Positions 15,929-33,658 are shown, counted from the stretch's first letter. The stretch: DNA of 64,000 nt from Chlorokybus atmophyticus (GCA_009103225.1 RHPI01003369.1:851490-915489), one strand, 5' to 3'. The notes: a model not told the origin generated them from the letters alone. Numbers and translations are program-made.

Positions 15929-18900
15929 TTATAACGACGAGGATGAGGTGCTGCTGGCGCGACTCTGGCCTCCAATGAAGTAAGCCTGCGTGTCGCTGTG
16001 GAAGGTGCCATGGCCGTGGCCTCCAAACACAACGAAGAAGGGAGCCACGCCATCCAGGACGACCACGCCGCCGTTGGCGTCATACCTACCAAGGCCGGTC
16101 TCGCTGTAGAGAGGCTGCCACCGCATGGCGGCCACATCAAACCTCCACACGTCGTCCAGGGCTGTGCGCATGCGCCTCCCGCCCGCGCCGCCAACAACGT
16201 ACATGGACCCGCCGAAGGCGCTCGCCGTGTGGGCGAAGCGTGCCTCAGGGATGGTTGTCGGGAAGAGGATGGAGTCGGCGGGCATGGTGGCTGTACCGTT
16301 GATGGTATTGGATGTGAAGTTCAAGGTGCGGGGACCCAACAGGGTCCATGCCAAGGACGTGAAGTTGTACTGCCACAGGTCGGACATGAGCCCACCGGTC
16401 TGGCTGTACCCACCGTACACGTACATGCTGTCCTGGATGACAACGGCGGAGTGCCCGAAGCGCGCGGGCAGGCCCTCAACCTCGGAAGCCAACAACTCCC
16501 ACTCGCTGCTGGCGAAGGAGAACTTCCAGAAGTCGCCCAGCGGCTGTGGTGAGCGCCCGCCAAACACGTACATCTCGCCATCATATGCCACAGCGCTATG
16601 GTCGTGCCTTCCAGCCGGCGTGGTGTTGGTTGCCGCAGCAACAAACGTCCAATCCTGCAATAAAGCAAATCCACTTGTCAGTTCCACGCTCAACAGTTGG
16701 ACTCGCTGGCAAGCGTTGTCTGAGTTTTGTTCCAATGGCTTACCTCAGCAGTGGTGGAGTACTTCCACACGTCGCTGTACTGGAAGGCGCTGCGCTCTCC
16801 ACCGAAGATGTACACGTCAGTGCCGTTGACAACCGCAGTGTGGCCCTTGCGGGCGGGGGGCGTGTGGGTTGTCTCTACAAGAGCCCACTCTGCGACAGAG
16901 GGTTCAAAGAGAACAGCCTCTGTGGCGCTGAGATCAACAGACGCGTTGACACTGGGGAGGTACTTTGTGACGATGATAGCGTCCCAGTAAGCGTTGCCCT
17001 CCACGTTGTCAGCGAACATGCCGCCGCGGATGAAGACATTGTCCCCGAGGGTGCTGGGCTGGTTGCTGAGGGTCTTTGCTGGCGCGCCGTCGACGTACAT
17101 GGTGAGGGACGTGTCGTTGCTGTAGAAAGCGAGGCCGTGCCAGCCGGGTGAGCGTGGGACAGCTGCTGACCTCCACGGATACGAGGTGGCAAACATGTCC
17201 TCCGAGGCGCTGGTGTACAGCCCCAACGCATTGTTCAATGGCAAACGCGACTTGCGGTTCTCCACGTTGCAGGTCGCCTGGCCTGGTGTGTCGGGACTGA
17301 TGTAGTGAGTGCTGTCCGAGCAGCTGCCGTCAAACAGGTACGCCTTGAACCGATACGAAGGCATCGAGTCCAAGGCAGTGGTGATGTCCAGCTGGATGGA
17401 CCCGCCGGGGCCGGTTTGCGTGTCCACGCGAAGTGCACGAGAGCCCTGAAGCGCCACCTCACCGGAGGTAGTGAACGAGTCCATGCTGCTAACACTGATG
17501 AAGCCCGGAGAGCATGACGAGTCGTCCCTGAGGCTCCATCCGTGCTCGAAGATGCTGGCGTTGTACTCGAACCCTTCAAAGAGCTCGAAGATGGCATCGG
17601 TGGAGGTCGACGTGGACGTCTGCGAGCCGTAGTACATGAAGAAGTCGTCCGAGGACATGACCTCCACCCAGAAGAGCGTGTCGGGAGCTCCGCAGCCGGG
17701 CAGAGGGTCAACCCAGTACTGCAGCATGGTGCCGTCGGAGGTGACGAAGCGGATGTCCCCGCAGTCGCCCCGGAGGCTGCCCTCAGCCATGAGTGCAGCC
17801 GTGTCAACCACAACCTCAAGGATATACGCCGCCACATCGATGGCGCCGGACACCGTCACGGGCGCACGGAAAGCAAAGTAGTCCTCCCAGCTCACGCTGC
17901 CCAAGTTGAGCTTCCACGTCTCGCCAAGGTAGGACTTGTCCTTGCCCGCGCCGCCAAACACAATCACCTCAGAACCGACCACAGCAGCGGAGTGCTCGAA
18001 GCGCTCTGCTGGCAAGGTGGTGCTGTCGACCTCCCTCGGGACCCACTCGGACACGGTGAACACAAGGCTGTCGATCAGCTCGCAGTGCATGCGGTCCATG
18101 TCCTCGCAGAGCTTTGCATCAACAGAGAACACGCCCGACTGGGGGAACATCAGGAACATCTCAGCGGTGCTGCTCTCAGCGCCAACCGCGGCAGCTCCAT
18201 AGACGCTGTCGCCGCCGCTGACCTCGAGCACAAGGCGGTCCAGGACCTCGGTGTCGACGGGGACGGGATTGAAGTTGGCATCCAGCACCCGGATAATCAG
18301 AGATGTGGACACGCCGGCCTGGATGTTCCTGTCATGGCTGCCGAGCACAGCACTGGTCTGCGCTGCAGCCGCACCAGGAAGGATGGTCACGTTGTATGAG
18401 AAAGCAGCCTTGGAGCCAACAAGGATGTCCAGTACAGCGGGCCCAGCCTGTGTGGGAATGACAGTCATGTTGTACTTGTCAAGTCCTGTCCAGGTGTGGA
18501 CGCCAGCGACAGTGCTGCCCTGCAGCCAAGTGGGCATGCACGTTTGCTGGTCATCAGCCTGGGTGACAAGGTACTCGGGGTATGTAATGGTGACGGCATA
18601 TGGCTGTGAGCCATCAACCTCCTTGAAACCGCAGCTGTCAATGCCAGTCATGGCAAACACGACTGGCTCGCCAGAGATGGCCTTCTTGATGCTCCAAGTC
18701 TTGCAGCGGCCATCAGCACATCGCGGCTTCGGTCCGGCCTTCGGCACTCCAATGATGGTGGGCGCCATCTCTGAGGTCCAAGTGCTCATGCTGGGTGAGC
18801 TGCAGATGACGCTGATGGCGAGGCTCTTTGTGACACGGTCGCACGGGTTGCCAAAGAAGTCATCATTCGAAGCCATGACAGTGCATGAGCTCTCGCCGAG

Positions 18901-21900
18901 ACAGGCCGCGCTCACAACAGACATGGAATTGTTGCTGCTGCAGTCGTCCACAAAGTATGCACCGCCCACACCCAGGTTGGTGCCATAGTTGGCGAACACA
19001 ACATCAGAGATGAGGGTGCCGACTGGGCAGGTGATGTGCGCCCTGTGTCCCTGGTCCACCTCCGTGAACTCCACGCCGATCATGCCGTGGTTGGCTGACA
19101 TGCTTGAGTCCCGTGCATTGTACCCGGTGGCCTCGTTGAAGCGATAGAATGCCACCAGAGACTTGTCTTGCCTCGCAAGGGTCGCTTGGTCGCACGTGCA
19201 CGCAGCAGCGTAGTCGATCTGAGAGGTGGACAACACCCTGTTGAACAGTTTGACCTCATCAATGTAACCGTCAAAGTCCTTGCCGACACGGAGAGGCTGG
19301 TTGTTGCGCTTCTGCAGCAGGACCTCCTGGTAGTCGTATGTTGCGTTGGCCACGTTCTCGCCGTTCACGAAGAGCTGCAGCTGGGTGCCGTTGTACGTAG
19401 CAGCCAAATGCAGCCAGCTGCTGTACTCGACGTCAATGACGTGGTCCATGACGCGGAAGGTCTCCGAGCCCACGTAGATGCCGACTGTCACGTTGTAGCC
19501 GCCCAAGTGATCAATACGCTGCATGCCGAACCAGTAGCCCTTGTTGCTGTGCTCGGACTGCTTGGACAGGATATACTCGTATGGCGTGATCAAATCATCA
19601 GCCTGCAGCAGCCTCCTCCTGCCGCCCTGGTCGGGGGGTGGAGGTGAGGGGTGTGGGGGAGGTGGAGGCGGGGGTGGGGGAGGTGGTGACGGGCGAGGGG
19701 GAGGGGGAGGTGAAGGTGGCGGCGGGCTTGGGGGAGGTGGCCTGGGTGAGGGCGGCGGGGGACTTGGCGGCGGCGGAGGTGGTGGTGGCGGAGGTGGGGA
19801 AGGAGGGGGAGGGCTTGGCGGGGGTGGGGACGGGGATGGGGGTGGTGGGGATGGAGGCGGCGGCGAGGGCACTGAGGGCGGGTGCTTCCACACCCACGCC
19901 ATCATGGTGAAGGGCGACTCGAGGTCCAGAAGGTCTGAGTCAGGGTACGTTGCATATGTGCTGCCAAAGGTGGTACTGAGAGCACTACCGTCAAGCACCT
20001 CCAGTGGGAACATGCAGTTCTCGCCCGCCGGGCTCATAGATAGCGTGCACGCGCTGCGTGCTGCCTTGGTACCTCCACAGCAGGCCATGCCGCCGTACTG
20101 CAACATGGAATACTTGCTCAGATACACGGCAAAGGACAACAATCGCTTGCACACTTTCCAACAAAATATACCTGGCAGATAGGCTGTCCGCAGAGCGTCA
20201 CATTCATCATGTAGTGGCCCTTGACCTTGGGCAGGTACGTGATTGTGTACGTGCCGTCATAGTTGTCCATTACATCAGCATTGAGGTCGTAGGGTCCGGA
20301 GATTGACACTGCCCATGCGCTGTCCCCGCCCATTGTGCGAAGGTTGCCATATGCATCCACAGTCTGCATATGCACAGTTTCACATAAGCACAAGTGCATA
20401 CCACAACACAATCATTTAATAGCGTACCTGCGCCATGAAGGTTGCAGGAACACCAGCTTGAGCGCTTTCAATGACATTGAGGCCGTAAGTATTGTTGCTT
20501 GCCAAGTACAGGTAACTCTGGGACGGATCGGCAACACTCGGATGCACATAGGTCTTATCAGCGTAAACTGTCTGTCCATCGAGCTCCACCTGATATAGCA
20601 CTTGATTAGCATCAACTTGACAATGCCAAATTGCTGTTAAAGGCCACCCACAAGTCCATACCTGAATGTAATAGTAGCCGCTGATGGTGGCGCTGAACAT
20701 GACTGAGTATGTGCCATCATTGAGGTCCTCGATCTCAAGCTCCACTGAGTTGGAGTGCAAGTGAAGAGGGCCAATCAGGGACGCCGTGTACATGTCGCCA
20801 CCAACCTTCCTCCTGTTGCCACAAGCATCCCGCGACGTGACCGTAAACACGCCACACTCCCCAGCCACAACTTCAGTGAGAGCTGTGCCAGCCACATCGC
20901 TGATTGAAGCATCTGAGAGAGAAAGCAGCTTGTCAGCAAATCTAATGCAGACGCGTGTACTGAACAGAACTTATGACTAACGAACTACTTAGTCTTGTTC
21001 TAAGTTACCTGTGAGGGAATGCATGTCACTGTTTTCAGTCCAGCTGCTGCAGCCAACGGTGGTGTTGACCCAGAACTCAAAGGCAGCAGGCTTGGGGCTC
21101 ACATGCAGGTCACCCGCAGCAGCAAAGATACCAGCATTGCTGGAGTCCTGGACAACGGTGCCCAGACCTTCATCAAGTTTCAGCCACAGAGTCATGTTGC
21201 TCTCGGGGGCCTTGGGCACGCAGTTCATGCCAGCTACAATGCTGTCAATGTCAGTCATGGCAACGTTGTACATCTTGACGGAGTGGATGAGGCCATTGAA
21301 GACGCGCTCGTACTGCTCGGTGTAGTACAAGCCAGTTAAGCCGCCGGCCATGTTCTCACGGCCTAGCATGAAGTCTTGGCTGCTGCCCGTGTAGTAGGCG
21401 ACTGAGTCATAGTTGGTCCAGTCCTTGAGGATGCCATCCACATAGATGGCCCAAGAGGACCCGTCATACACGGCAGTAATGTACTGCCACATGTTGGGGA
21501 CGACAGCAGCCTTCCAGCTCGAGAGCGTTCTGTATGCTTCGCACTTGATGTTGGTGTCGCGGCCGCACGAGCAGCCGGTGTAGAGAGCAACGGACACGCC
21601 ACCCTTCTCAATGCTAAAGCCAAAGCCGGTGTAGCCGTTATCCAGAGTCTGGCCGATGATGGTCTGGTAGCCATCAACGGTATATGGGTAGACCCACGCA
21701 GACACCGTGAAAGGCCCGGCACCCGAGCGAAGGTTGTGTGTGGGCACCGTTTCATTGGCGATGGAGCCTGAGACCGTCGACCAGCGCAGCTGGTATGAGG
21801 CAATGTCCGACTTGTCCGTGTAAGCAAACCAGATGGAGTACCAGCGAGGGCCAGTCAGCTCAATGCTGCCAGACAGCACGCGAGCATCCACCTCACGGGC

Positions 21901-24900
21901 GGTGTCGTTGACCAGCAGCACATCATCGACCTTGAGCGCAACAGCATCATCGGCACGCACGGAGAAGTTGTACGTATCAGTGGTGGCTGCGAACACCCAG
22001 CCGGTGATCTCCACCGACCAGTCGTCGAGGACGCTGATGCCAGCTGGCGCCGCGAGTCCCCACTCGGCATTGATGTTGGAGATGAGCTCGGTGACCTGCT
22101 CGTTGCCGGCGGTGTATACGGCAACGAGTCCGCTGCTTCCTTGAGGGGTTAGGCCGCTTGGTGCAATGGACACATACTGGCCGGCACCAAACTCGAGAGC
22201 GTAGTCCTCAGTGTAGTACAGCTTGGCGATCTCAGCGCCGCTAAGGATGCGGTTGTAGATGCGCACCTCATCAACAGCGCCGTGCAGCGTACGGCCGATG
22301 ACAGATGTGGTTAAGATCTCCAGGGCAGGGGCCGCGTACGCAGAGCTGTTGCTGATCTGGTGACCATTGAGGTACACGCGCGTCTCTGCCGCATCAACGG
22401 TGACGGCAATGAACTGCCAGGCCCCGTTAATGGTGGCGTTGCCGGCCTGGCAAGCGCTCTCCTCGTAGCCGCTGCATGTGTCATAGGACGGGAAGACCAT
22501 GTCGTCGAAGTACACCCACATGCTGACTGTGGCTGCGCCGTCACATGTGGTGATGTACACGCCTGCCGCTACGTCATCGAGGAACATGTAAGCACTGTTG
22601 CTGCGTCCATCTTTGTCTGCACATTCCAACATTGCAGGTGAGAAATTCACAACATTTTGATGCCATGACGAAAGGCCCACATTGGTGCCGACAAAGTGTG
22701 CTGCTACATACCTGCTGTAAGGACTGCTTCAACAGCCATGCCATGGTTGCCGTTGCCGCTAGCATCCTTGGCATCGCCATTGAAGGGATAGTAAGCGCAA
22801 AGGCCGTGCACTAGGTCCTCTAGGATGACTTCACGCTCGTACGTGAGGGAGTTGACGGGGGCGCCGCAGATGGCCGAGTTGATGACAGTCAGGTCATCGG
22901 GTGTTGTGCTGGCGGGCAACGTGACCGTCATCTCCTCATTGGAGTTCCATGTGGACGCCAGCACCTCACCATTGAGCATAACCGACGCGGTATCAGCAAA
23001 GTTGATGCCCGTGATGGTGACCTCGGTGCCATTCTTGACTGCGCCAGAGGTCTGCATGTACACGTCTGAGGCGGCGGACGTGTCGTGAATGCTGATTGGC
23101 ACCGCGGGGAACCACGGCACGCCGGCCCACGTGCCGGCAGTGTGTGCGGACTTGTCAAGTCCCGTGCCCTTGAAGCTCAGGGTGGTGTTGTCCCAGTTGG
23201 AAGACTCCGATTGAGCAAGCACGCCACCGCCCGACACAATCCCGGACTCGATGTCGATGCTGTTGAACTGCAGGTAGCCAACGGGCTCGGCGCTGGCCGC
23301 GTCGCCTCCACACATGAACGACATCACCTCCTCCGCCGTGAGAGCATAATCGTAAACACGGACCTGCACATCCCAACAACAACCTTGTGTCAGGTACGTG
23401 CAACATAGAAGTTGTCGCAGAAGTAGGTATATATAAGATGGAAGATTGAGTCCTTACCTCATCGATAAGGCCTGAGAAGTACTCAGATGGGTAGTGGTCG
23501 TCATCAAGGGTCATGCCAACATACAGAGTGCCGTTGACAGACGTGTCCGGCCGGGAGACTGTTGCAAACGTTGAGGCGGCCATTCCATTGATGTACAGAG
23601 TGCCTTCATTGGTTTCATTGACTGTGTGACACAAGTTGGTGTCAGCTAGATCACGACCAGCATGCACGTGAATATACCACCCAACATGGCATGCACATTA
23701 CCTGTTACGAAGACATGATGCCACTGGCCAGTGGCAACATATCTGTCGCTTCCATCAGGGTACTTCATGCCAACATCATGAATATGGTCGTCGTAGTAGT
23801 AGAACACGCCAAATGGAGAATTGGAGTCACCCTTCCATTGCAGCACGGCACGATTGCGGTTGTCGCCCAGGCTGCCGAATGCAATGACAGATTGCAGTTC
23901 GCTGTTCTCATAGGGATACGCCCACGCGCCGAAAGAGTACGCTGGTGAGGTCAGCGCGGGAAGCACGCTCTTGAAGTCCACAAAGTCCATTGTCGTCCAC
24001 CTGTCCGTGCACTCAATTGCGACAGAAAGCCACTTCTTGTCGTGCGGGCACGCGTCGCCAAACCAAGACACCACTGCAGGAATGCTGCAGGTGCTCTGGC
24101 CAATGCACAGCTCCACCACGACCTCGTGCACAGTGCTGCTGTTGCTGTCGCAGAGGTTGTTGGTGGTGAAAGTGGTAAAGTCGCACAGTATGTCGGTGGT
24201 TGAGCTGTCGCAGTTGGTGTGCACGTCGTTGTTGCACTTGTTTGCGGGCCTTCCAAAGCTGGCAAATTGCAGGTTCTCCATGCGCAGGCCTGTGGGGCAG
24301 GTCAGCGTGAGAGTGTCGTTCTCATCAGCATAGCCACCAATCAACTCTGCAGGAGTCGTGGTGCGATCGCCCTGGAACTCCAACACCTTCTCTGAGTATG
24401 AGAGCGACGCGAACGCATCCGTGGACTTTGGGTTCACCACTTGCAGGACCATCTGGCCAGGTGCATCTGCAGGAGCAGACTCGCACTCGGCGCTCAGACC
24501 ATCATAGTGCACAAGGCTAAACATAAACAAGTTGTCGGTGCTCTCCGCAACAGGCAGAGTTGCAGCTGTGTGCTTCACGGCCGTGACAATTGTGGTTGTG
24601 TTGCTGCTTGGCAGGGTGTTGACGAATGAATGCGCACACTTCAACCACTGACTCTTTGCCAAGTTGAAGCCTTTAACCAGCATGGTGTCGCCACCATCCA
24701 GCTGCATGGTCTCAGCTTCGCTCAGGGTAAACCTTGATGAAGCCTCCCATGGAGCGGTCACGTACATGTAGCCCGGCTCGTTGTTGATGACAAACTGAGC
24801 GGTACCCTGCTCGCGCTCGCCCTTGTTACCTGTGGGGAAGCTGTCCAGCACGCCAAGCGCATCCTCAGTGGGCGTGAACGTGTACAGCTGCTGGCTGTCA

Positions 24901-27900
24901 CCGGTGCTTGGGTTCATGCGATAGTACACTATCGGCGCAGTGTCATACTCGCTCTCAGGCAAGCGGGAGAACATGGTCTGCGTGTCGCGAGCCATATCCG
25001 GAGAGGCGAACACGCGCACTTCATCAATGAAGCCGTTGAAAAACTTGCCAGTGTCAGCATTGCAGTGGCCCATCTCGGTGATGCCGCCGGTGCCGCCACC
25101 AGAGTTTGCGAGCAAGCGGCGGCGGCCGCCCTGATCAGGTGGGGGAGGGGAAGGTGGGGGTGGAGGAGGAGGTNNNNNNNNNNNNNNNNNNNNNNNNNNN
25201 NNNNNNNNNNNNNNNNNNNNNNNNNNNNNNNNNNNNNNNNNNNNNNNNNNNNNNNNNNNNNNNNNNNNNNNNNNNNNNNNNNNNNNNNNNNNNNNNNNNN
25301 NNNNNNNNNNNNNNNNNNNNNNNNNNNNNNNNNNNNNNNNNNNNNNNNNNNNNNNNNNNNNNNNNNNNNNNNNNNNNNNNNNNNNNNNNNNNNNNNNNNN
25401 NNNNNNNNNNNNNNNNNNNNNNNNNNNNNNNNNNNNNNNNNNNNNNNNNNNNNNNNNNNNNNNNNNNNNNNNNNNNNNNNNNNNNNNNNNNNNNNNNNNN
25501 NNNNNNNNNNNNNNNNNNNNNNNNNNNNNNNNNNNNNNNNNNNNNNNNNNNNNNNNNNNNNNNNNNNNNNNNNNNNNNNNNNNNNNNNNNNNNNNNNNNN
25601 NNNNNNNNNNNNNNNNNNNNNNNNNNNNNNNNNNNNNNNNNNNNNNNNNNNNNNNNNNNNNNNNNNNNNNNNNNNNNNNNNNNNNNNNNNNNNNNNNNNN
25701 NNNNNNNNNNNNNNNNNNNNNNNNNNNNNNNNNNNNNNNNNNNNNNNNNNNNNNNNNNNNNNNNNNNNNNNNNNNNNNNNNNNNNNNNNNNNNNGGGTGG
25801 GGGTGGCGGGTGGGGTGTGGGAGGAGGTGGTGGCGGTGGTGGAGAGGGCGGAGGAGGTGATGGTGGAGGGGGAGGAGGGGGAGGTGATGGTGACGGTGGT
25901 GCCAGACCGCACCAGACACCACCAACGTAGAAGTTGCCACCTGCAGAAGGCACACCATCCATGGCGAATGGAATAGAGAAGTTGAGCTTCACGCCATCCA
26001 CCATGAGTGTTGCCTCGTATGCAAAGTCGGACATGTCGGAGGGAAGGTCAATCTCCGTGTTGTTGATGACCACCTCAGCGTAGTGCCACTCGTCGAGCAC
26101 TGCCACCATGCTAACCGTCTCGTTGTATTGGTAGTTGAGTGTCTCAGAGCCGTACTGAACCTCCGCGTCTGAGTACAGATACACGCGCTGGTTCTTGTAC
26201 ATTATGCACACTTGCAGCGGGACGTTTGAGCCTTGGTTGCCAGCGCAGGGGGCCGCAAAGCACAGCACCGGCTGATCCTGGCAGACGCTGTCGCCAATAG
26301 GATAGAACCATGCTCCCATCGTGATGCCGGAGAAGGGAGTGTTGGAGGCAGCATTGTTCGCCCAAGGCGAGTCAACGTAGTCATCATCACCGTCAAAGTA
26401 CAACGCCATCTCCATGACTGTCAGCGACTCGGGAGTTGTGTATGATGGCATGACAGCTCCGGTTGTGTTCTGACTCTCACATGGGTAGGGGATTTGTGTA
26501 CCCTCCGCTGCGGCATTGTTGGTGATGCTCAGGTCAAATACTCCAGGCGTGTCTTGGCCAGGTACATCGCACTCGACGCGATCGAAAGCCATAAACTTGG
26601 CTGGGATCAGCTCATCATTGAGAGAGCACTGCAGCCACTGAGAATTCGCATAACCGAAGCCGAGCATGGTAACTTGATCGTGGCCATCGATAGGGATGGT
26701 CTGCAGCAACAGGTTCTCATAGTACTCGCTGCACCTGTAGTCATTGGTCGTTGGTATCCCTTAAGATAAATACAGCAATAGAAAAACATGGCACGCACAT
26801 GATCACTTGAAAGCACATCTTACCCAATAGGTGTTGGTGCAGGTGTTGGTCCAGTCCAGGCGCCAGAGTCAATAGCGTTGGGTACATAACTCCACAGGCT
26901 GGTGGGAGCACACCATGAACTGTCGCGTGCCTTAGCAGCTTGCAGAACGCAAGGCGGCAAGAATGGCACGGTGGTCATGGTCCAGAGCGGCTCATCATTA
27001 GCAGCTCCATCAAATGCATGAACAGCCAAGGCAGGGTTGTTGTAGCGCGAGCTGTCCGATACGACGCTTCCCGTGAAGTCATTAAACGCGTAGCGCGCGA
27101 TCTGGTCCTTGGCTGTGTCTGGCTGCACGGTGCTACAGCTGGGGCTAAGGGCGCCACGCGTGACGTTGCCGGTCCACATGATGGCCTGCACCTCGCACGC
27201 CGTCAATGCGCGTTTCCACACGGTCACCTCCTCCACCATGCCCTTGAAGCAGTGGCCGATGCCATCGGAGTAAGCCAGCAGCCTGCGGCGGCCTCCCTGA
27301 TCCGGCGGAGGCGGGCTGGGTGGCGAGGGCGGTGGGGGTGATGGCGGCGGATGGGGTGGTGGCGGGGAGGGTGGTGGTGGGGGAGGTGGTGGCGGCGGGG
27401 GGCTCGGGGGAGGTGGAGAGGGAGGCGGCGGGCTAGGGGTTGGTGGCGGGGGTGAAGGAGGTGGTGGCGGGGGTGGAGAGGGAGGAGGTGGGGAGGGAGG
27501 AGGCGGGGATGGCGGTGCGCGCTGGAACTGGTAGGTGCACCCGATGTGGAGCTCGCAGAGCGGGATAGATTCGGGGAACAGCTGTGTGGTAATGTTGGTA
27601 TCGAGGAGACCATCAACATACAGGCTGGCTGTTCCATTGCTGTGGACAGTGAGCATGACATAGTGCCATTCATCGGCGGCAGCCACAATGTTTCCGGCCT
27701 GGAACTGCACCGTGCCTTCGTGCGTGCGATCGACGTACGCAAAGGTGTTGTCGGTCTGATAGTACACCGCAATGCCTTCTGCGCTGATGACATTCTCAAA
27801 CTCCAGAAGACGACGGCCACCCTGTTGAAGGTTGATGTCAGCATGCAATCTGGATCACCATGTGCAATCCAACAACGTGACATTAAGCTTACTGCTTCCG

Positions 27901-30900
27901 GAGGAGGTGGGGAAGGTGGAGGTGGTGGGTGAGGTGAGGGCGGTGGTGGAGGAGGTGGAGGGTGCGGGGTTGGGGGAGGAGGGCTAGGAGGAGGCGGAGG
28001 GGGTGGGGAAGGCGGCGGTGGTGAGGGCGGCGGTGGTGAGGGTGGAGGAGGAGATGGAGGTGGTGGCGGCTCGGGTGTAAGCTTGCTTGTCCACATGAAA
28101 ACGATGCTGTCCTTTGCCATGCCGCTCTGCATCACATCAGTACCTTGTCAGCCTTGTGTCTGATTCAATTTGGTGGAGTGCGTGTCAAGAATTGCAACTA
28201 CTGGCAAAGACGTACCTGCGGATATACCCAGCCACCCACAGAGTATCCTGTAAATGTGCTGTTCAGATCATCGGCGACAGTGTCAGAGTTGACAAACTCA
28301 TCAACACCATTGAACCGCATGGCCTCCTCCAGATAGTACAGCGGAACCTGAGTATTGTATCCGTTGTATTAGCACCACAAACAACAAGTGCCTACACAAC
28401 TGTGCACAACACTTTTGACATACCTGGTTGTCACTGAAATCAACATCATTGTTGCTGACATCAACAGGGGGCGAGCACGGCGTGGATTCAGGAGTGATGG
28501 CTTCGATGTCTGTGTTGGAGATCCACTTGGCGGGAATGACTTCCGCTCCGACCCTGACTTTCAGCCACTGGCTGCGAGCAAAGTTGGCTCCCGTCACGGT
28601 CATCTGCTGCCCACCATGAACGTGTGCAACGGGGGGGCCATCTTCAACAGACACGCGCAGTGGGCAAGTCTTCGTGAGAGGAGTTGGGGCCCACTCGTAC
28701 GTGTACACGCCAGTCCCATTCCAGCGAGCATGGTTGTCTGAGCCCGAGGAGTCCACGATGGTGAAGTTCATCGCTTCAACAATGAACTCCGCAGTGCCAG
28801 GGTTGGCAGGTGCAGTGCCGTCTGTCTGCGGGTACTGGTAGAACCCATCAAGGGCGCCCTCGTTGAACTTGTAGTACCCAACGAGGCCAACCTCTACTGA
28901 AGCATCCAAATGATACGTCATCTGTGCGGAGATCTCGATTGACGTCAGCGCCCTGCTGTAGATGCGGACCTCATCAATCAGGCCGGTTGTTGTCTGGTTA
29001 TACAACGAGCCAATGAAGAAGTGGCCTTCCGCGCCGTTGACGCTTTCGAGCACTGAGCCAACAACGCCGACCTTGCCGTCGACCATGTCGGCATTGGTTG
29101 ACTCCTTCGACCATGGGTAGTGCTCTCGGCTACCGCTGGCATACTGAACATACTGCACGCCATCCAAGTAGATAGTGACCAGGCCGGCGGGGTCGATGGT
29201 GAGCATGGCAAAGTGCCACTCGCCATCGCAGTACATAGGCTCCGTGCTAAGAGTTGTCTGATTCACATCGCTGCCGTTGACGTACACCAGCTGATAGTAG
29301 CTGCCGAGGGTCTTGTTGTTGACACCATCATTGAAGGCGAGAGGGTACACTGGCTCCCACAGGAGCTGATGCACGATGATGAACTCAGCGCCGCTCTCGG
29401 GGGTGTAACCGGCCGTGAGGATTGGCTGCGCAAAGGCGCCTGTCTCTTCAAACAAGAACCACGCGCCCATGGACATGCCGCAGTCGGCCGTGAGAGAGGG
29501 GAGGACCTCATCCGCCAACACGTACGCTCCGGACTCGAAGCTGGCGGCCATGTCGGTGACAACAATAGTGTAGCAGCGCTCATCGCAATATGTGCCATCT
29601 GTTGGGTCGCACGGGCCCTCAAGTGTAGAACCCCACTCGGCCGGGCTGCGGCTGTTTTGCGCGGTGAAGCACAGCTGGTATTCGCACTCTTGCGACGAGG
29701 CGGGTGTCCACATGAAGGTCTTTGTTGAGGGGTCGCTGACATGGTCGATGAACTCGGCTCCGTCGGGAAGCTCTCCCTGGCTGAGGTTGATGCGGATGGG
29801 CCCGTAGCCGGAGCCCTGCTTGGCGGCCAGCATGAAGCTCAACGTGTTGTTTGCGGTGACGTAGAACTTGGTGTTGTTGAAGGGCGTCACTGCGGTAGGT
29901 AGAGTGCCGAACGTGTTGTACATTGCGGGCGTCGGCCATGCGCGCTGATCCATCCAGTACAGCGGCTTGTCCTCGTACAACGTGATGTGGACACAACGGA
30001 ACTGGGAGACGATGTAGTTGTCCGTTGTCAAGAAGCAGACCGCCACATCCCTCGGGCGCACATCAACGTCCACACCATTCAAGGTCTCAAAGATTGGCGC
30101 CCACGTAAATGTCCGACGAACCTGTAAGGGTTTTCTTTCTTGTCAGTCACCATCTCGCGTAATATCAATATGACCTCATTGCTGAGCCAATAACATACCA
30201 ACAGCACGCGAGCAGTGCCAGGTGAGTGATGGTGTGTGTACCTGTCGCTCATCGTCGCGAACATGGTCGCCAAGAACCATTCCTGTGTAGAGGCCCACAT
30301 CAATAATTTGCAGCTCCACGCACTCATCATCGTCGCGCGCAACCAGGTTGAAGGTGACGGTGCTGCCCACACGCTTGCGGAACAAGGCTCGCGGAATAGG
30401 GCAGGTGGAGGTGGGTGGCATGCACTCCACGTCCTTTGGCGTCAAACCGTCATCAACAGTCACCGACTCCACCCAGTATGGCGGACTGTGAAAATATAAC
30501 GCGTCAGTGACTATAATCTGTGTCAACCAAAGACAGGACACACAGTGCCCACTTTGCATGCAACTTACATGTTTTTCTTGCAGGAAGGAACGGCTGGAAT
30601 AATTGACAGCGGCAAGACGGGGTTGGGCAGAGTCTGCACGAGGTTGCTGCAGTCCATGTCTTTGTTCAAAAGGGCATTATTAGCGTCAACCACAACACCG
30701 GGGCAGCTCGTGCCAGTCGGGCAACTGTCGGAGCCGCTCAGCGCGTGTCCAGGCACCACCGGTCGGCAACGCGTGTAGTCTTCAACAACGGTGGTATTCT
30801 CCTCACCACCTCCGCAAATGGTGCACTTGCCGGTGCCCGGCCCGTTGTAGACGAACGGGGCCGTGTGAGGGTCTCCGTAGAATCCATCGGCGGCGCGGAA

Positions 30901-33658
30901 CGTTTGGATGCCGCTGAGGGTGTTCTGGCAATCGATGGAGCAGTAGTGCATCGACGGGTACAGGTAGATGAGGAAGTCCAGCGGCGTGGAGATGTTGCCC
31001 TTCATCGGGCCGTTCATGTAAGCAGCAGACGCATCATTTGCTGGGCCCGACACCTGAAACGCATCACTGTTACAACACATCCACCAAGCAGATGATAAAG
31101 AACAAAGCACATGAACCAACAACAGCACTCACCATGACCACCAAGTTGTAGAAGCCGGACTTCATGGGCTGGCGGGGAGGGTTGGGAGCGGGGCTGCCAT
31201 CCGGGTAGGGTGCCGAGTCAATCTCAAATGGGCCGATACCAGTCTCCCAGGTCACGATACCAGTCAATTCATCAATGACAAGGTAATCTGGGTTGGTAGC
31301 GTAGTTCACATTGTCGGACCAAGCTGGCAACGACGGGTTGAACTGCGCGCGCTGCGCCTCGTACACCCACGGCCACCACGTCATGGTTGTAGGGTTGTAA
31401 ACCGGGTTGCCCATCAATGCACCATACCTAATTTGGTAATCAGTAAGGTGAGTGACTGTCAAACAACTATCATCTGTTGTAATGTGTACTGAACAAGAGC
31501 ATAACACTTACTCGACCCTGGTACCCAGCCGATAGTACATGGGCTGGTTAGCAAGTTCACCCTCGCCTTGAGAGATCAAGTCTGGATCGAACGCAGCGAT
31601 TTGGAAGTTCGCCATGCCCTCAGCGCGGCCAATATAGGGTTGAGGCAACACGGGGATCTGCGAGCACCAGGTTTATGCCCATGAGCAAGCTCTCTCTTTT
31701 GTTCTCGAGCAACACCATCATTGCAATGCAATGATGGTGTTGATGTGGACAAACCTGTGTAGGACGTGGTGAGTTGTTGGTTCCCTGTACGTTAACGGTG
31801 ACTTCCAGACGGAAGCGACCGTTCTGGTTGTTGTTGAGGTTGACAAGACGGTTGCCTCCAGTGAAGTAGGCTAGCCATGGCTCAGCGGCTGACTTCTTTG
31901 CAGTGGCGTAGTTGTGAGTAAACACAGCCTTGCCACGAATGAAGTTGCCGGCTTTGCTTGAGGTCGAGTCCACCTGGTTGATAGCCATTGAAACCTCTTG
32001 CGTGGCTCCATCGCCATAGAAGAAACCGAAGACCTGCCAAGTCTGGTTTAGAATTCACCAACTACGTGTGCATACATCATGACGAGTTGTGCAAATGCAA
32101 GCAAACTGAAGTAGCATTTGCTGAGCCTTGTCATAACATCCAACCTGTGACCAAGGCGTGCAGTAATCGGGTTGATCGTTCGGTCCAGCTTCGCAAGGAA
32201 GGCCGCTTGGGTACAGCGCAGCCAGCGTCGGCTCAGAGAACTGAACCAGCGTGCCGACGGAAATGCCGTTCGGGCAGTCGGGACTGTCACCAGGATCATT
32301 GTACGACGTGCACTGGCAGGGGCCGTGAGGGCAAGCCTGCGTTGTGCCGCTCGCTGGCAGCAGCGGGAACGCCGAACCCAGACCCCTTCCCACCGGAAAT
32401 CGCAAGTAGTACGGGTGGTTGGGGTCGTCATATGTCGTTCCAGGCGCAAACTGCTCACAAGAAACAAGGGCGTGTCACACAGTGGTTTACAACAAGCATG
32501 AGATGTGCTCTGGCATCAACAGTTGAAACCACATTGCCACCTGCAGGGGCTCAGCACAGCCCTCCCCGTTCTGTTGGGGTTTTGTGTTCTTTGTTTGTTT
32601 GTTTGTTTGGTTTTTTTTTTNNNNNNNNNNNNNNNNNNNNNNNNNNNNNNNNNNNNNNNNNNNNNNNNNNNNNNNNNNNNNNNNNNNNNNNNNNNNNNNN
32701 NNNNNNNNNNNNNNNNNNNNNNNNNNNNNNNNNNNNNNNNNNNNNNNNNNNNNNNNNNNNNNNNNNNNNNNNNNNNNNNNNNNNNNNNNNNGGGGGGGGG
32801 GGGGGGGGGGGGGGGGAGCAACCAGTGCTCATGTTGAGATCGCTAAGCTCATAAGCAAGAAGTACATATTCACCTAGAGCTAAGTGTGATGACCCACCGT
32901 GAGGAACGTGTTTGGGTCAACGATGATGTGAGCGGGTGGCACAGTGGTGATGGGAGTGTCGGGCACACCCGAGTGCCAGTCCACGCCATCCGACGACCAC
33001 AGCTCGTTGAAGAACTTGCCCCATGTGTAGTCCCGACGGAAAGCCGCCTGAAATGTAAACTGCACCTGGTACTGCGTTGACGCATCTGAACCCGGCTTGG
33101 GCTCCCAGTAGATTGTACCGTAGCGGAAATGCGTGGCTGCGCAATTACGTCACCGTTAGTCACTGAGGCTTCCATATTACGCAAAAGCATGAGACCTTAT
33201 CGACACGCATAGCTCCCTGACAAGTGTGTTCGTGCTTTGGTACTCTTTTTACAACTGCAACTGAAGGTGGTGGTGTAGCGCAATTGAGCAAGAAGCTACT
33301 GAAGGTGATGTTGAGGCCACTCAATTGACTTACGTTGAATTCAAAAAACAAGCAGTTTAACACGAATGGAGCACACATCTTGGTAATGTCCTCACATGTG
33401 TATGCAGCCGATCACAAAACTCTACAGGCACACCGCTATGAGTGCGTAGTCAACAGTGAGCCGACTACATGTGGACAGTACTCTAAGTGGATGTGCTAAC
33501 GTCAAGCACAACGTTTGCTGAGTTACAAGTGCGATCGACCAACGCCCGCCCTTACCAGAGGCAACGGAGAGTGTACAGAGCAAAAGCAACAGCGCCTTGC
33601 TCGCCAGCTGCCCGCCCCCCTGGCGGGGGGGCCGTCTTCTCCGGCTTCCTTCTTCCAT
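15929..33658 (-). CDS. Giant secreted multidomain glycoprotein of about 5,000 aa: signal peptide, HFRYG-type N-terminal region, ~7 LamG/ConA-like domains, IPT/TIG x3, Ser-Pro(n) rods x4, SUEL lectin x2, PA14, filamin-like x2 or more, DUF2341, C-terminal Kelch propeller
   Basis: ATG at 33658 gives MEEGSRRRRPPRQGGGQLASKALLLLLCTLSVAS, spliced to ATHFRYGTIYWEP. Long - strand ORFs (28301-30082, 26820-27848, 25135-26709, 23646-25958, 20989-22680, 16690-20154, 15929-16735) are linked by GT-AG introns. LamG motifs (xAWVYP...WH...LYVDG...F.G.IDEVR) recur. Stop at 15929; no C-terminal TM segment seen. The N gap 25174-25794 lies in a Pro-rich coding tract. Confidence 0.88.
17540..17890 (-). other. DUF2341-like domain within the giant protein
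   Basis: WEDYFAFRAPVTVSG...EVVVDTAALMAEGSLRGDCGDIRFVTSDGTMLQYWVD...LFWVEV...FMYYGS...IFELFEGFE matches the DUF2341 pattern (D..DIRF....L.YW.E...WVK...Y.YYGN...F..FDDFE). Confidence 0.75.
18780..19040 (-). other. SUEL/galactose-rhamnose-binding lectin domain (C-terminal copy)
   Basis: HITCPVGTLISDVVFANYG...CSSNNSMSVVSAACLGESSCTV...FFGNPCDRVTKSLAISVIC. Confidence 0.85.
20200..20890 (-). other. Two filamin/ABP280-type Ig repeats
   Basis: FTVTSRDACGNRRKVGGD...DLNDGTYSVMF and TVDAYGNLRTMGGD...DNYDGTYTITY. Confidence 0.8.
21735..22130 (-). other. PA14 carbohydrate-binding domain
   Basis: INAEWGLAAP...DDWSVEITGW...YNFSVRADDAVALKVDD...LSGSIEL...YSIWFAY...LRWS...VP..NL. Confidence 0.8.
24005..24320 (-). 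other. SUEL lectin domain (N-terminal copy)
   Basis: LTLTCPTGLRMENLQFASFGRP...CDSNSSTVHEVVVELCIGQSTCSIP...FGDACPHDKKWLSVAIEC. Confidence 0.85.

What the first reader, a model, noticed from the sequence alone, without database searches (positions are those of the whole stretch)
19606..28075. Four Ser-Pro(n) rods ending in a GGRR(R)LL cleavage/amidation-like motif, each inserted inside a LamG domain
Seen: every Pro-rich block ends in P-[DE]-[QA]-G-G-R-R-(R)-L-L. DQGGRRRLL occurs at 19606-19632, 25110-25136 and 27276-27302. EA|GGRRLL is formed across the intron 27822-27892. The Arg codons differ between copies (AGG AGG AGG; CGC CGC CGC; CGC CGC AGG; CGT CGT), so the motif looks conserved as protein rather than as recently copied DNA. 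Each rod interrupts a LamG fold mid-domain, e.g. FTMMAWVWKH-[rod]-ILSK...WLHLAATY and LHIG-[rod]-FKGMVEEV. Established: Gly followed by basic residues is the signal for convertase cleavage, carboxypeptidase trimming and PAM amidation; Chlamydomonas has PAM and amidated ciliary products; SP(n) tracts are hydroxyproline-glycosylated in green algae. Inference: the precursor is nicked within folded domains, leaving stiff glycosylated whiskers with amidated tips projecting from LamG cores. That would be a programmed processing system for a wall, scale or flagellar-surface protein.
Basis: partly seen in the sequence, partly recalled or inferred. Interest (0 to 1): 0.88.

Follow-up and report, generated by a model that had tools for sequence, protein, structure and literature searches.

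The report
Proline rods ending in RRLL motif
A giant secreted lectin-like protein of an early-diverging streptophyte alga carries four proline-rich rods inside folded LamG domains, and each rod ends in a conserved Arg-x-Leu-Leu motif that looks more like a site-1-protease cutting site than an amidation signal.

Summary
On the minus strand, four Ser-Pro(n) tracts end in GGRR(R)LL. They are in frame, and RNA contigs show no splicing that removes them. They sit in loops of Laminin_G_3 domains where rodless homologues have only 0-10 residues.

Among the four copies, 25 of 39 codon pairs differ, all synonymously. The collinear Mesostigma viride orthologue has rods ending in GGRRLLQ at the loops of rods 1-3.

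The amidation reading is not supported:
- At the same loops, rodless homologues keep RSLL (Chara), RHLL (Cymbomonas) or RRRSLL (a metagenome protein), often without Gly or a dibasic pair.
- R[RKSH]LL occurs 17 times against 0.5 expected in six green-algal proteins. In 163 other homologues it occurs 11 times against 9.5 expected.
- Gly-dibasic without LL is not enriched.

R-x-L-L is the site-1 protease (S1P/SBT6.1) motif, as in Lassa GPC (RRLL) and plant pro-pectin-methylesterases (RRLL/RKLL). AlphaFold gives its lowest confidence to the motif.

My best reading, which is inferred, is Golgi nicking after Leu-Leu. The pieces would stay held together by the LamG fold and by flanking cysteines.

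The scan noted the same pattern on another piece of this genome (s1-177207). The assembly gap lies inside rod 3, and its true length must be 3n+2.

The parts
15932..33656 (-). Multi-exon gene for a giant (about 5,000 aa) secreted multidomain protein. It starts with ATG at 33656 followed by a hydrophobic signal-like stretch. Domains include several Laminin_G_3, TIG, two SUEL lectin, PA14, filamin, DUF2341 and Kelch.
   Evidence: Pfam. tblastn of Mesostigma P0006 residues 29-4959 is collinear with 33134-15965. The N-terminus was read. RNA-confirmed GT..AG introns.
27893..28075 (-). Rod 1: a Ser-Pro(n) tract (PEPPPPPSPPPP...SPPPPEA) in the loop after strand IVFMWTS of a LamG_3 domain.
   Evidence: It is fully covered by a spliced RNA contig (X1 record 7, 27892-28126).
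27822..27892 (-). Phase-0 GT..AG intron between ...PPPPEA and GGRRLL.
   Evidence: RNA joint 27820>27892 (cut +1) in runs X1 and X2. Sequence read.
27804..27821 (-). Motif 1: GGRRLL (GGT GGC CGT CGT CTT CTG), followed by EFENVISAEGIAVYY.
27303..27518 (-). Rod 2: a Ser-Pro(n) tract in the loop between LHIGCTYQFQRA and the F-K-G-M-V-E-E-V strand of the same LamG_3 domain as rod 1.
   Evidence: RNA contigs 27480-27809 and 26844-27386 enter it from both sides.
27276..27302 (-). Motif 2: DQGGRRRLL, followed by AYSDGIGHCFKGMVEEV.
27249..27539 (-). Cysteine pair bracketing rod 2 (Cys codons 27539-27537 and 27251-27249). The same pair is present in Mesostigma. A disulfide is inferred, not shown.
25137..25902 (-). 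Rod 3: a Ser-Pro(n) tract interrupted by the assembly gap 25174-25794. The frames on the two sides need a true gap length of 3n+2.
   Evidence: RNA contigs stop at 25155 and 25795.
25110..25136 (-). Motif 3: DQGGRRRLL, followed by ANSGGGTGGITEMGHCNADTGKFFNGFIDEVRVF.
25062..25911 (-). Cysteine pair bracketing rod 3 (Cys codons 25911-25909 and 25064-25062). The pair is conserved in Mesostigma, Chara and metagenome protein P0028.
19633..19881 (-). Rod 4: a Ser-Pro(n) tract inserted between strands FTMMAWVWKH and YEYILSK of a LamG_3 domain. Mesostigma has no rod here, and rodless homologues have 0-10 residues at this point.
   Evidence: In the AlphaFold model the strands are 51-59 and 162-168.
19606..19632 (-). 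Motif 4: DQGGRRRLL, followed by QADDLITPYEYILSK. Model residues 144-156 are the only internal segment with pLDDT below 50.

Best explanation
The four Ser-Pro(n) tracts are translated. They are presumably hydroxyproline-O-glycosylated loop inserts in three different surface loops of Laminin_G_3 (ConA-like jelly-roll) domains. The host is a giant secreted multi-lectin protein of a Chlorokybus-like streptophyte alga.

Each insert ends in a short linear motif whose conserved core is R-[RKSH]-L-L. In this lineage the motif is extended to [DE]-x-G-G-R-R-(R)-L-L-[QAE].

I read this as an endoprotease recognition site of the site-1-protease type (S1P / SKI-1 / plant SBT6.1, consensus R-x-hydrophobic-L). 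The cut would fall after Leu-Leu in the Golgi, the compartment where Hyp-arabinosylation stiffens such rods.

Cleavage would free the C-terminal end of each rod. The two halves of the LamG sandwich would stay together through the fold. At rods 2 and 3 a flanking cysteine pair would also hold them.

Shown:
- The rods are translated and retained in RNA.
- They lie inside the domains.
- The motif is under protein-level constraint.
- It is conserved in Mesostigma, Chara, Cymbomonas and other Chlorokybus proteins.
- It is about 33-fold enriched.
- It is predicted to be disordered.

Inferred:
- That the motif is cut at all.
- Which enzyme cuts it, and at which bond.
- That the rods are glycosylated.
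- That the cysteines form a disulfide.
For: - All four rods in the window end in GGRR(R)LL, with 25 synonymous and 0 non-synonymous codon differences.
- The collinear Mesostigma orthologue P0006 has rods ending GGRRLLQ at the loops of rods 1, 2 and 3.
- Two other Chlorokybus proteins have rods ending EAGGRRRSLLQ, EAGGRKLLQ, GGGRRRLLQ (twice) and SGRRRLLA. Two of these rods are in LamG_3 loops.
- Rodless or non-proline loops at the same positions keep RSLL (Chara, twice), RHLL (Cymbomonas) and RRRSLL (P0028 and a second Mesostigma loop).
- R[RKSH]LL occurs 17 times against 0.52 expected in six green-algal proteins. In 163 other LamG/SUEL homologues it occurs 11 times against 9.5 expected.
- AlphaFold puts the motif in the lowest-confidence segment, both in the window's rod-4 LamG (pLDDT below 50 at residues 144-156) and in the rodless Cymbomonas LamG (loop 198-218).
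- The S1P consensus is R-(R/K/H)-L-(A/L/S/T/F), and RRLL is the Lassa GPC site (PMC2685025).
- Plant SBT6.1 acts in the Golgi on RRLR and RRRAL sites (PMC7162652).
- Arabidopsis pro-PMEs carry RKLL and RRLL processing motifs (bioRxiv 10.1101/2022.07.28.501549).
- SKI-1-like subtilases are reported throughout Archaeplastida, in a survey that included the Chlorokybus and Mesostigma genomes (PMC6713707).
Against: - No cleavage product has been seen. The evidence is motif resemblance plus conservation.
- The preference for Leu-Leu is stricter than known S1P sites. R[RKSH][IVM]L and R[RKSH]L[IVMF] are not enriched, although animal and plant S1P accept RxVL and RxIL.
- I did not show that this genome has an S1P gene.
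- A conserved, disordered R-x-L-L could equally be a docking or sorting motif.
- The second AlphaFold model rests on only 10 sequences and has mean pLDDT 66.
Confidence: 0.45

Rival explanations
1. The motif is conserved but is not a cleavage site. R-x-L-L would be a structural or interaction element. It might act as a hydrophobic and basic anchor that returns the chain to the LamG core after a long insert. It might be a docking site for a modifying enzyme (prolyl hydroxylase or glycosyltransferase) or a cargo receptor. It might be a contact for acidic wall polysaccharides.
For: - The motif always sits at the re-entry end of the insert, never at its start.
- The strict Leu-Leu preference is tighter than known S1P sites.
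- No cleavage has been shown.
Against: - The spacing from the motif to the next conserved strand varies from 8 to 23 residues.
- AlphaFold gives the motif its lowest confidence in two models. This argues against a fixed packed element.
- The motif also occurs in loops with no insert to return from.
Confidence: 0.3
2. A kexin/furin-type convertase cuts after RR(R). A carboxypeptidase trims the basic residues. PAM converts ...Q-G-G into an amidated ...Q-G-NH2 tip.
For: - Gly directly precedes a di- or tribasic run in all four window copies, all three Mesostigma rods and most Chlorokybus copies.
- Chlamydomonas has active PAM and amidated products on large proteins with proline-rich regions (PMC6919629).
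Against: - Orthologous loops in Chara (KAERSLL, FFGRSLL) and Cymbomonas (PMRHLL) lack the dibasic pair, and two of these three also lack the Gly, yet all keep R-x-L-L.
- G[RK][RK] without LL is not enriched: 16 observed against 10.8 expected.
- The model gives no reason for the constrained Leu-Leu.
- PAM was not looked for in this genome.
Confidence: 0.08
3. Endoproteolysis occurs, but by a PEXEL/TEXEL-type aspartic protease that cuts R-x-L | x-[EQD] after the first Leu, not by a subtilase.
For: 13 of the 21 collected motifs read R-x-L-L-[QE], which matches RxLx[EQD]. RRL is the Toxoplasma TEXEL core; that point rests on my own knowledge and was not checked in the paper library.
Against: - PEXEL and TEXEL motifs lie near the N-terminus of exported apicomplexan proteins. 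Their proteases (plasmepsin V, ASP5) are not known from green algae.
- Eight of the 21 motifs have A, S or G at position 5.
- The second Leu is as constrained as the first.
Confidence: 0.07
4. The rods are not part of the mature protein. They would be unrecognised in-frame introns (exitrons) or assembly artefacts of low-complexity DNA.
For: - C-rich tracts rarely contain stops in any frame, so an open frame is weak evidence.
- One rod holds an assembly gap.
- Two odd joints link rod 2 to rod 1 (27402>27938 and 27425>27902).
Against: - A spliced RNA contig carries all of rod 1 between two confirmed introns.
- RNA contigs enter rods 2 and 3 from both sides.
- No joint has the rod boundaries.
- The two odd joints have non-canonical ends, only 21-25 matching letters on one side, and very high depth. 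They look like cross-mapping of other Pro-rich transcripts.
- The tract-plus-motif lengths of rods 2 and 4 are multiples of three.
- The Mesostigma gene model has the same rods.
Confidence: 0.03

Closest known systems
Site-1 protease (S1P / SKI-1 / plant SBT6.1) substrates: Lassa virus GPC (RRLL), plant type-I pro-pectin-methylesterases (RRLL, RKLL), CLEL6 (RRLR, RRRAL)
   Same: The four-residue core is the same: R-[RK]-L-L, with Arg at P4 and Leu at P2 and P1. The substrate is luminal or secretory. The site lies in a flexible segment next to a folded domain. The green lineage already uses RRLL and RKLL for Golgi processing of wall proteins.
   Different: - Here the site lies inside a folded domain, at the end of a proline-rich loop insert. 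It is not at a pro-domain/mature-domain junction or next to a membrane anchor.
- There are several sites per protein.
- Leu-Leu is more strictly required.
- Cleavage is unproven.
Extensin-type hydroxyproline-rich glycoprotein modules (Ser-Pro3-5 repeats) of plants and green algae
   Same: The rods are SPPPP and SPPPPP repeats of 60-90 residues in a secreted protein.
   Different: - The rods are inserted into loops of globular domains rather than linking or flanking domains.
- No Tyr cross-link motifs are present.
- Each rod is capped by a basic Leu-Leu motif.
- Hydroxylation and glycosylation are not tested.
Prohormone convertase / carboxypeptidase / PAM precursors, such as Chlamydomonas Cre03.g204500 (pro-GATI-amide)
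   Same: Gly is followed by two or three Arg, in a large secreted algal protein with proline-rich regions.
   Different: Conservation across species tracks R-x-L-L, not Gly-dibasic. No amidated product is known for this protein.
Disulfide-bridged, protease-nicked surface loops of two-chain secreted proteins (own knowledge, not checked here)
   Same: At rods 2 and 3 a cysteine lies 6-8 residues before the insert and another 7-20 residues after the motif. The pair is conserved in Mesostigma.
   Different: The disulfide is only inferred. Rods 1 and 4 have no such pair.

Membership tests
Laminin_G_3 / ConA-like jelly-roll domain | Pfam PF13385 match above the gathering score | tested here: met
   Bit scores of 28.7-99.3 against a cut-off of 27.6 on the exon pieces that carry the rods. 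The profile is interrupted at the rods: for example, profile positions 42-106 fall between rods 1 and 2, and 44-150 fall after rod 4.
Laminin_G_3 / ConA-like jelly-roll domain | The two halves either side of a rod form one beta-sandwich | tested here: met
   AlphaFold model of the rod-4 domain: mean pLDDT 81.6, with strands before and after the rod. Foldseek matches pentraxins, the PAPP-A LamG domain and lectin-like jelly rolls at E about 1e-6. Rodless homologues join the two halves with 0-10 residues. Rods 1-3 were tested by alignment only.
S1P / SBT6.1 cleavage site | Arg at P4, hydrophobic residue (Leu) at P2, Leu or similar at P1 | tested here: met
   RRLL in all four window copies. RRLL, RKLL, RSLL and RHLL in homologues. 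Consensus taken from PMC2685025.
S1P / SBT6.1 cleavage site | Site is accessible and unstructured | tested here: met
   pLDDT below 50 at the motif in two AlphaFold models. This is a prediction only.
S1P / SBT6.1 cleavage site | Substrate passes through the Golgi lumen | tested here: inconclusive
   An N-terminal hydrophobic signal-like stretch was read directly, and the domains are extracellular types. No signal-peptide predictor was available.
S1P / SBT6.1 cleavage site | An S1P-type subtilase is encoded by the organism | not tested
   The literature reports SKI-1-like subtilases throughout Archaeplastida, in a survey that included the Chlorokybus and Mesostigma genomes (PMC6713707). I could not search this genome.
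S1P / SBT6.1 cleavage site | The chain is actually cut after P1 | not testable with these tools
   This needs proteomics or an in vitro digest.
Convertase / PAM amidation precursor | Gly immediately before a di- or tribasic site | tested here: met
   GG-RR(R) in 4 of 4 window copies.
Convertase / PAM amidation precursor | The Gly-dibasic signal is the conserved, selected element | tested here: not met
   Chara and Cymbomonas keep R-x-L-L at the same loops without a dibasic pair. G[RK][RK] lacking LL occurs 16 times against 10.8 expected.
Convertase / PAM amidation precursor | PAM and a kexin-type convertase are present, and an amidated product exists | not tested
   Only this window was readable. 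Earlier notes on this genome mention subtilisins, but none was checked.
Extensin-type HRGP | Repeated Ser-Pro3-5 | tested here: met
   SPPPP and SPPPPP repeats throughout all four rods.
Extensin-type HRGP | Tyr-containing cross-link motifs between the Ser-Pro(n) repeats | tested here: not met
   There is no Tyr in any of the four rods.
Extensin-type HRGP | Hydroxylation and O-arabinosylation of the tract | not testable with these tools
   This needs glycoproteomics.

The most novel reading that the evidence does not exclude
Early-diverging streptophyte algae may use a programmed in-domain nicking system. Glycosylated proline rods would be grown inside loops of folded LamG lectin domains. An S1P-type protease would then cut at a dedicated R-x-L-L cap. 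The giant precursor would become a non-covalently and disulfide-held multi-chain assembly bearing free-ended rods. This would also place RRLL/RKLL processing of wall proteins, known from land-plant pectin methylesterases, before the origin of land plants.
Probability: 0.3. Interest if true: 0.8.

Novelty: new variant of a known kind. Interest (0 to 1): 0.62.

Why it matters
If the R-x-L-L caps are cut, this would be a new class of S1P-type substrates. The site would lie inside a folded domain and be coupled to a hydroxyproline-rich insert, rather than sitting at a pro-domain junction.

It would link the RRLL/RKLL processing of land-plant wall enzymes to surface proteins of Chlorokybus, Mesostigma and Chara, and perhaps of the prasinophyte Cymbomonas. 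That would date this wall-protein maturation step to before plant terrestrialisation.

It also gives a concrete and cheap proteomic test, because the three cleavage models predict three different neo-N-termini.

Even without cleavage, the finding has descriptive value. No paper in the searched library describes a 33-fold enriched linear motif that caps every in-domain proline rod in these proteins.

Tried and rejected
- A fifth rod near the second gap (32620-32810) was rejected. It is a poly-C run in an intron.
- A motif-only protein search (46 residues around motif 4) found nothing at E up to 10. A search with the rod-4 downstream region among 230-750 aa proteins found nothing at E up to 1e-20. 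Both are uninformative blanks.
- P0001, the 71%-identical Chlorokybus fragment, starts after the rod. It has no contig on record, so I could not read the paralogue noted by the scan.
- Recent DNA copying as the cause of motif identity was rejected, because the codons differ.
- Splicing-out of the rods was rejected on RNA contigs.
- The idea that the motif is a general terminator of all proline linkers was not supported. An unrelated metagenome protein (P0169) has 15 proline linkers ending PPLPPLVPGDC. Other notes on this genome describe many extensin-like linkers without the motif, but those notes are unchecked.
- A search of the paper library for GGRRLL, GGRRRLL, GRRLLQ and RRRLLQ gave only unrelated hits.
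- The read-laying table did not show the letters at the motifs in the diverged runs X2 and X3. Motif conservation among Chlorokybus strains therefore remains unchecked.

Full report
**What is there**

The region lies in a long multi-exon gene on the minus strand, from about 33656 down to about 15932. Stop-free frames and Pfam show many Laminin_G_3 domains, plus TIG, two SUEL lectins, PA14, filamin, DUF2341 and Kelch repeats. The first exon starts with a Met followed by a hydrophobic, signal-like stretch.

A tblastn of the 4,959-aa Mesostigma viride protein P0006 (eukprot Mv19218) is collinear with the window from residue 29 to residue 4959. The two genes are therefore orthologues. The closest database protein is a Chlorokybus atmophyticus fragment at 71% identity (P0001). 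The scan also holds a note of a paralogue on another piece of the same genome. I infer that the window comes from Chlorokybus or a very close relative; this was not shown.

**Checking the observation**

A six-frame scan of the 64 kb finds GGRR+LL only at those four places, and long proline tracts only in this gene. The codons differ as described. Of 39 codon pairs compared across the shared Gly-Gly-Arg-Arg-(Arg)-Leu-Leu, 25 differ and none changes the amino acid.

RNA contigs from four runs confirm six GT..AG introns, including 27822-27892.
- One contig, spliced on both sides, carries the whole of rod 1.
- Contigs enter rods 2 and 3 from both flanks.
- No joint has the boundaries of a rod.
- Two high-depth joints between rod 2 and rod 1 have non-canonical ends and only 21-25 matching letters on one side. 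I read them as cross-mapping of other proline-rich transcripts.

The rods are therefore part of the mature message.

**The gap**

The upstream flank ends on a codon boundary at 25795. The downstream frame leaves one orphan base at 25173. Continuity therefore needs a gap of 3n+2 bases, and the nominal 621 N (3n) cannot be exact. No RNA contig bridges the gap. Both flanks are proline tract in the gene's frames, and Mesostigma has one unbroken rod at this loop. A single rod 3 of unknown length is the likely reading.

**Position in the fold**

The rods are inside LamG_3 domains.
- Pfam matches are split by the rods.
- In rodless homologues from Chara braunii, Cymbomonas tetramitiformis and metagenomes, the two halves around rod 4 are joined by 0-10 residues. 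The window has about 100.
- An AlphaFold model of the rod-4 domain (57-sequence alignment, mean pLDDT 81.6) has strands 51-59 and 162-168 either side of an unstructured 60-161.
- Foldseek matches that model to pentraxin, PAPP-A LamG and other lectin-like jelly rolls.
- Alignment shows the same for rods 1-3.

Three different loops are used, not two. Rod 4 follows strand FTMMAWVW. Rod 1 follows the next strand, IVFMWTS. Rods 2 and 3 lie before the F-x-G-x-[IV]-[DE]-E-V strand.

**Conservation**

- Mesostigma P0006 has rods at the loops of rods 1, 2 and 3. They end PRGGRRLLQ, PAGGRRLLQ and EFGGRRLLQ.
- Mesostigma has neither rod nor motif at the rod-4 loop. Rod 4 plus its cap is therefore a later gain.
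- Two other Chlorokybus proteins (P0170, P0171) have rods ending EAGGRRRSLLQ, EAGGRKLLQ, GGGRRRLLQ (twice) and SGRRRLLA. Two of these follow the strand FTMEAWV of a LamG_3 domain.

**What is actually conserved**

At the same loops, homologues without proline rods keep a shorter core.
- Chara has FFGRSLLE at the rod-1 loop.
- At the rod-2 loop, Chara has a 115-residue Ser/Thr-rich insert ending KAERSLLA.
- Cymbomonas has PMRHLLQ at the rod-3 loop.
- Metagenome protein P0028 has GKRRRSLLQ at the rod-3 loop.
- Mesostigma has a further RRRSLLQ in a cysteine-bounded loop that has no rod.

R[RKSH]LL occurs 17 times against 0.52 expected in six green-algal proteins. In the other 163 LamG/SUEL homologues fetched, it occurs 11 times against 9.5 expected. 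G[RK][RK] not followed by Leu-Leu is not enriched (16 against 10.8), and neither are RxL[IVMF] or Rx[IVM]L. The residue after Leu-Leu is Gln in 11 of 21 cases. The selected element is therefore R-x-L-L. It is older than the rods, and Gly-Gly and the extra Arg are lineage-specific additions.

**Mechanism**

R-R-L-L is the textbook recognition sequence of site-1 protease.
- The arenavirus-derived consensus is R-(R/K/H)-L-(A/L/S/T/F), and Lassa GPC is cut at RRLL (PMC2685025).
- In plants, SBT6.1 acts in the Golgi on RRLR and RRRAL sites (PMC7162652).
- Arabidopsis pro-pectin-methylesterases carry RKLL and RRLL processing motifs (bioRxiv 10.1101/2022.07.28.501549).
- SKI-1-like subtilases are reported throughout Archaeplastida (PMC6713707).

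Both AlphaFold models put the motif in their least confident, unstructured segment. Rods 2 and 3 are bracketed by a cysteine pair conserved in Mesostigma. If that pair is disulfide-bonded, it would hold a nicked loop together.

My best reading, at about 0.45, is Golgi nicking after Leu-Leu. This would free one end of each rod while the LamG sandwich stays whole. All steps from recognition onward are inferred.

**Rivals**

- The motif may be a non-cleaved docking or anchoring element (0.30).
It fits neither the cross-species pattern nor the Leu-Leu constraint.
- A PEXEL/TEXEL-like aspartic protease cutting after the first Leu (0.07) is a look-alike from a distant lineage.
- Non-translation or artefact (0.03) is contradicted by the RNA contigs.

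**Novelty**

The paper library holds nothing on this motif in algae. Proline rods inside domains, capped by an S1P-like site, are not a described arrangement. The parts themselves are known: HRGP tracts, LamG domains and RRLL processing. I therefore class it as a new variant of a known kind. The scan independently noted the same pattern on another piece of this genome (s1-177207). I could not read that DNA.

Noticed in passing
window 32620-32810: A poly-C run of about 25 bases, an assembly gap and an A-rich tract lie in an intron near the 5' end of the gene. In six-frame translation this looks like a proline tract, but it is a homopolymer and not a fifth rod.
   Followed up: yes
window 27402-27938 and 27425-27902 (RNA joints): Very high-depth joints (up to 445) link rod 2 to rod 1. 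They have non-canonical ends and only 21-25 matching letters on one side. They probably come from other abundant proline-rich transcripts cross-mapping, not from splicing.
   Followed up: partly
P0006 (Mesostigma) residues 1930-1955; P0008 (Cymbomonas) residues about 1990-2015: A further loop of the rod-3 LamG domain, bounded by cysteines, carries RRRSLLQ without any rod in Mesostigma. The same loop carries a short proline-rich insert (KPPPPPPCPPAPSPPPV) in Cymbomonas. The window has neither feature there.
   Followed up: partly
P0009 (Chara braunii GBG58751.1) residues 1735-1850: At the rod-2 loop, Chara has a 115-residue Ser/Thr-rich, mucin-like insert instead of a proline rod. It still ends in RSLL.
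   Followed up: partly
window 22301-28300, runs X2 and X3: RNA contigs from two runs labelled as the same organism are only 90-95% identical to the window. Runs X1 and X4 are 99% or more identical. This suggests diverged strains or cryptic species that could serve for a dN/dS test of the motif.
   Followed up: no
P0169 (metagenome, 3,508 aa): An unrelated repeat protein has 15 proline-rich linkers, 14 of which end ...PPLPPLVPGDC. It shows that proline linkers elsewhere have other caps.
   Followed up: no
P0008 (Cymbomonas) residues 2108 and 2497: Both R[RKSH]LL occurrences in this 4,923-aa protein read RHLLQ. I recall RHLL as the ATF6 S1P site (own knowledge). Expected by chance: 0.10 occurrences.
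   Followed up: partly
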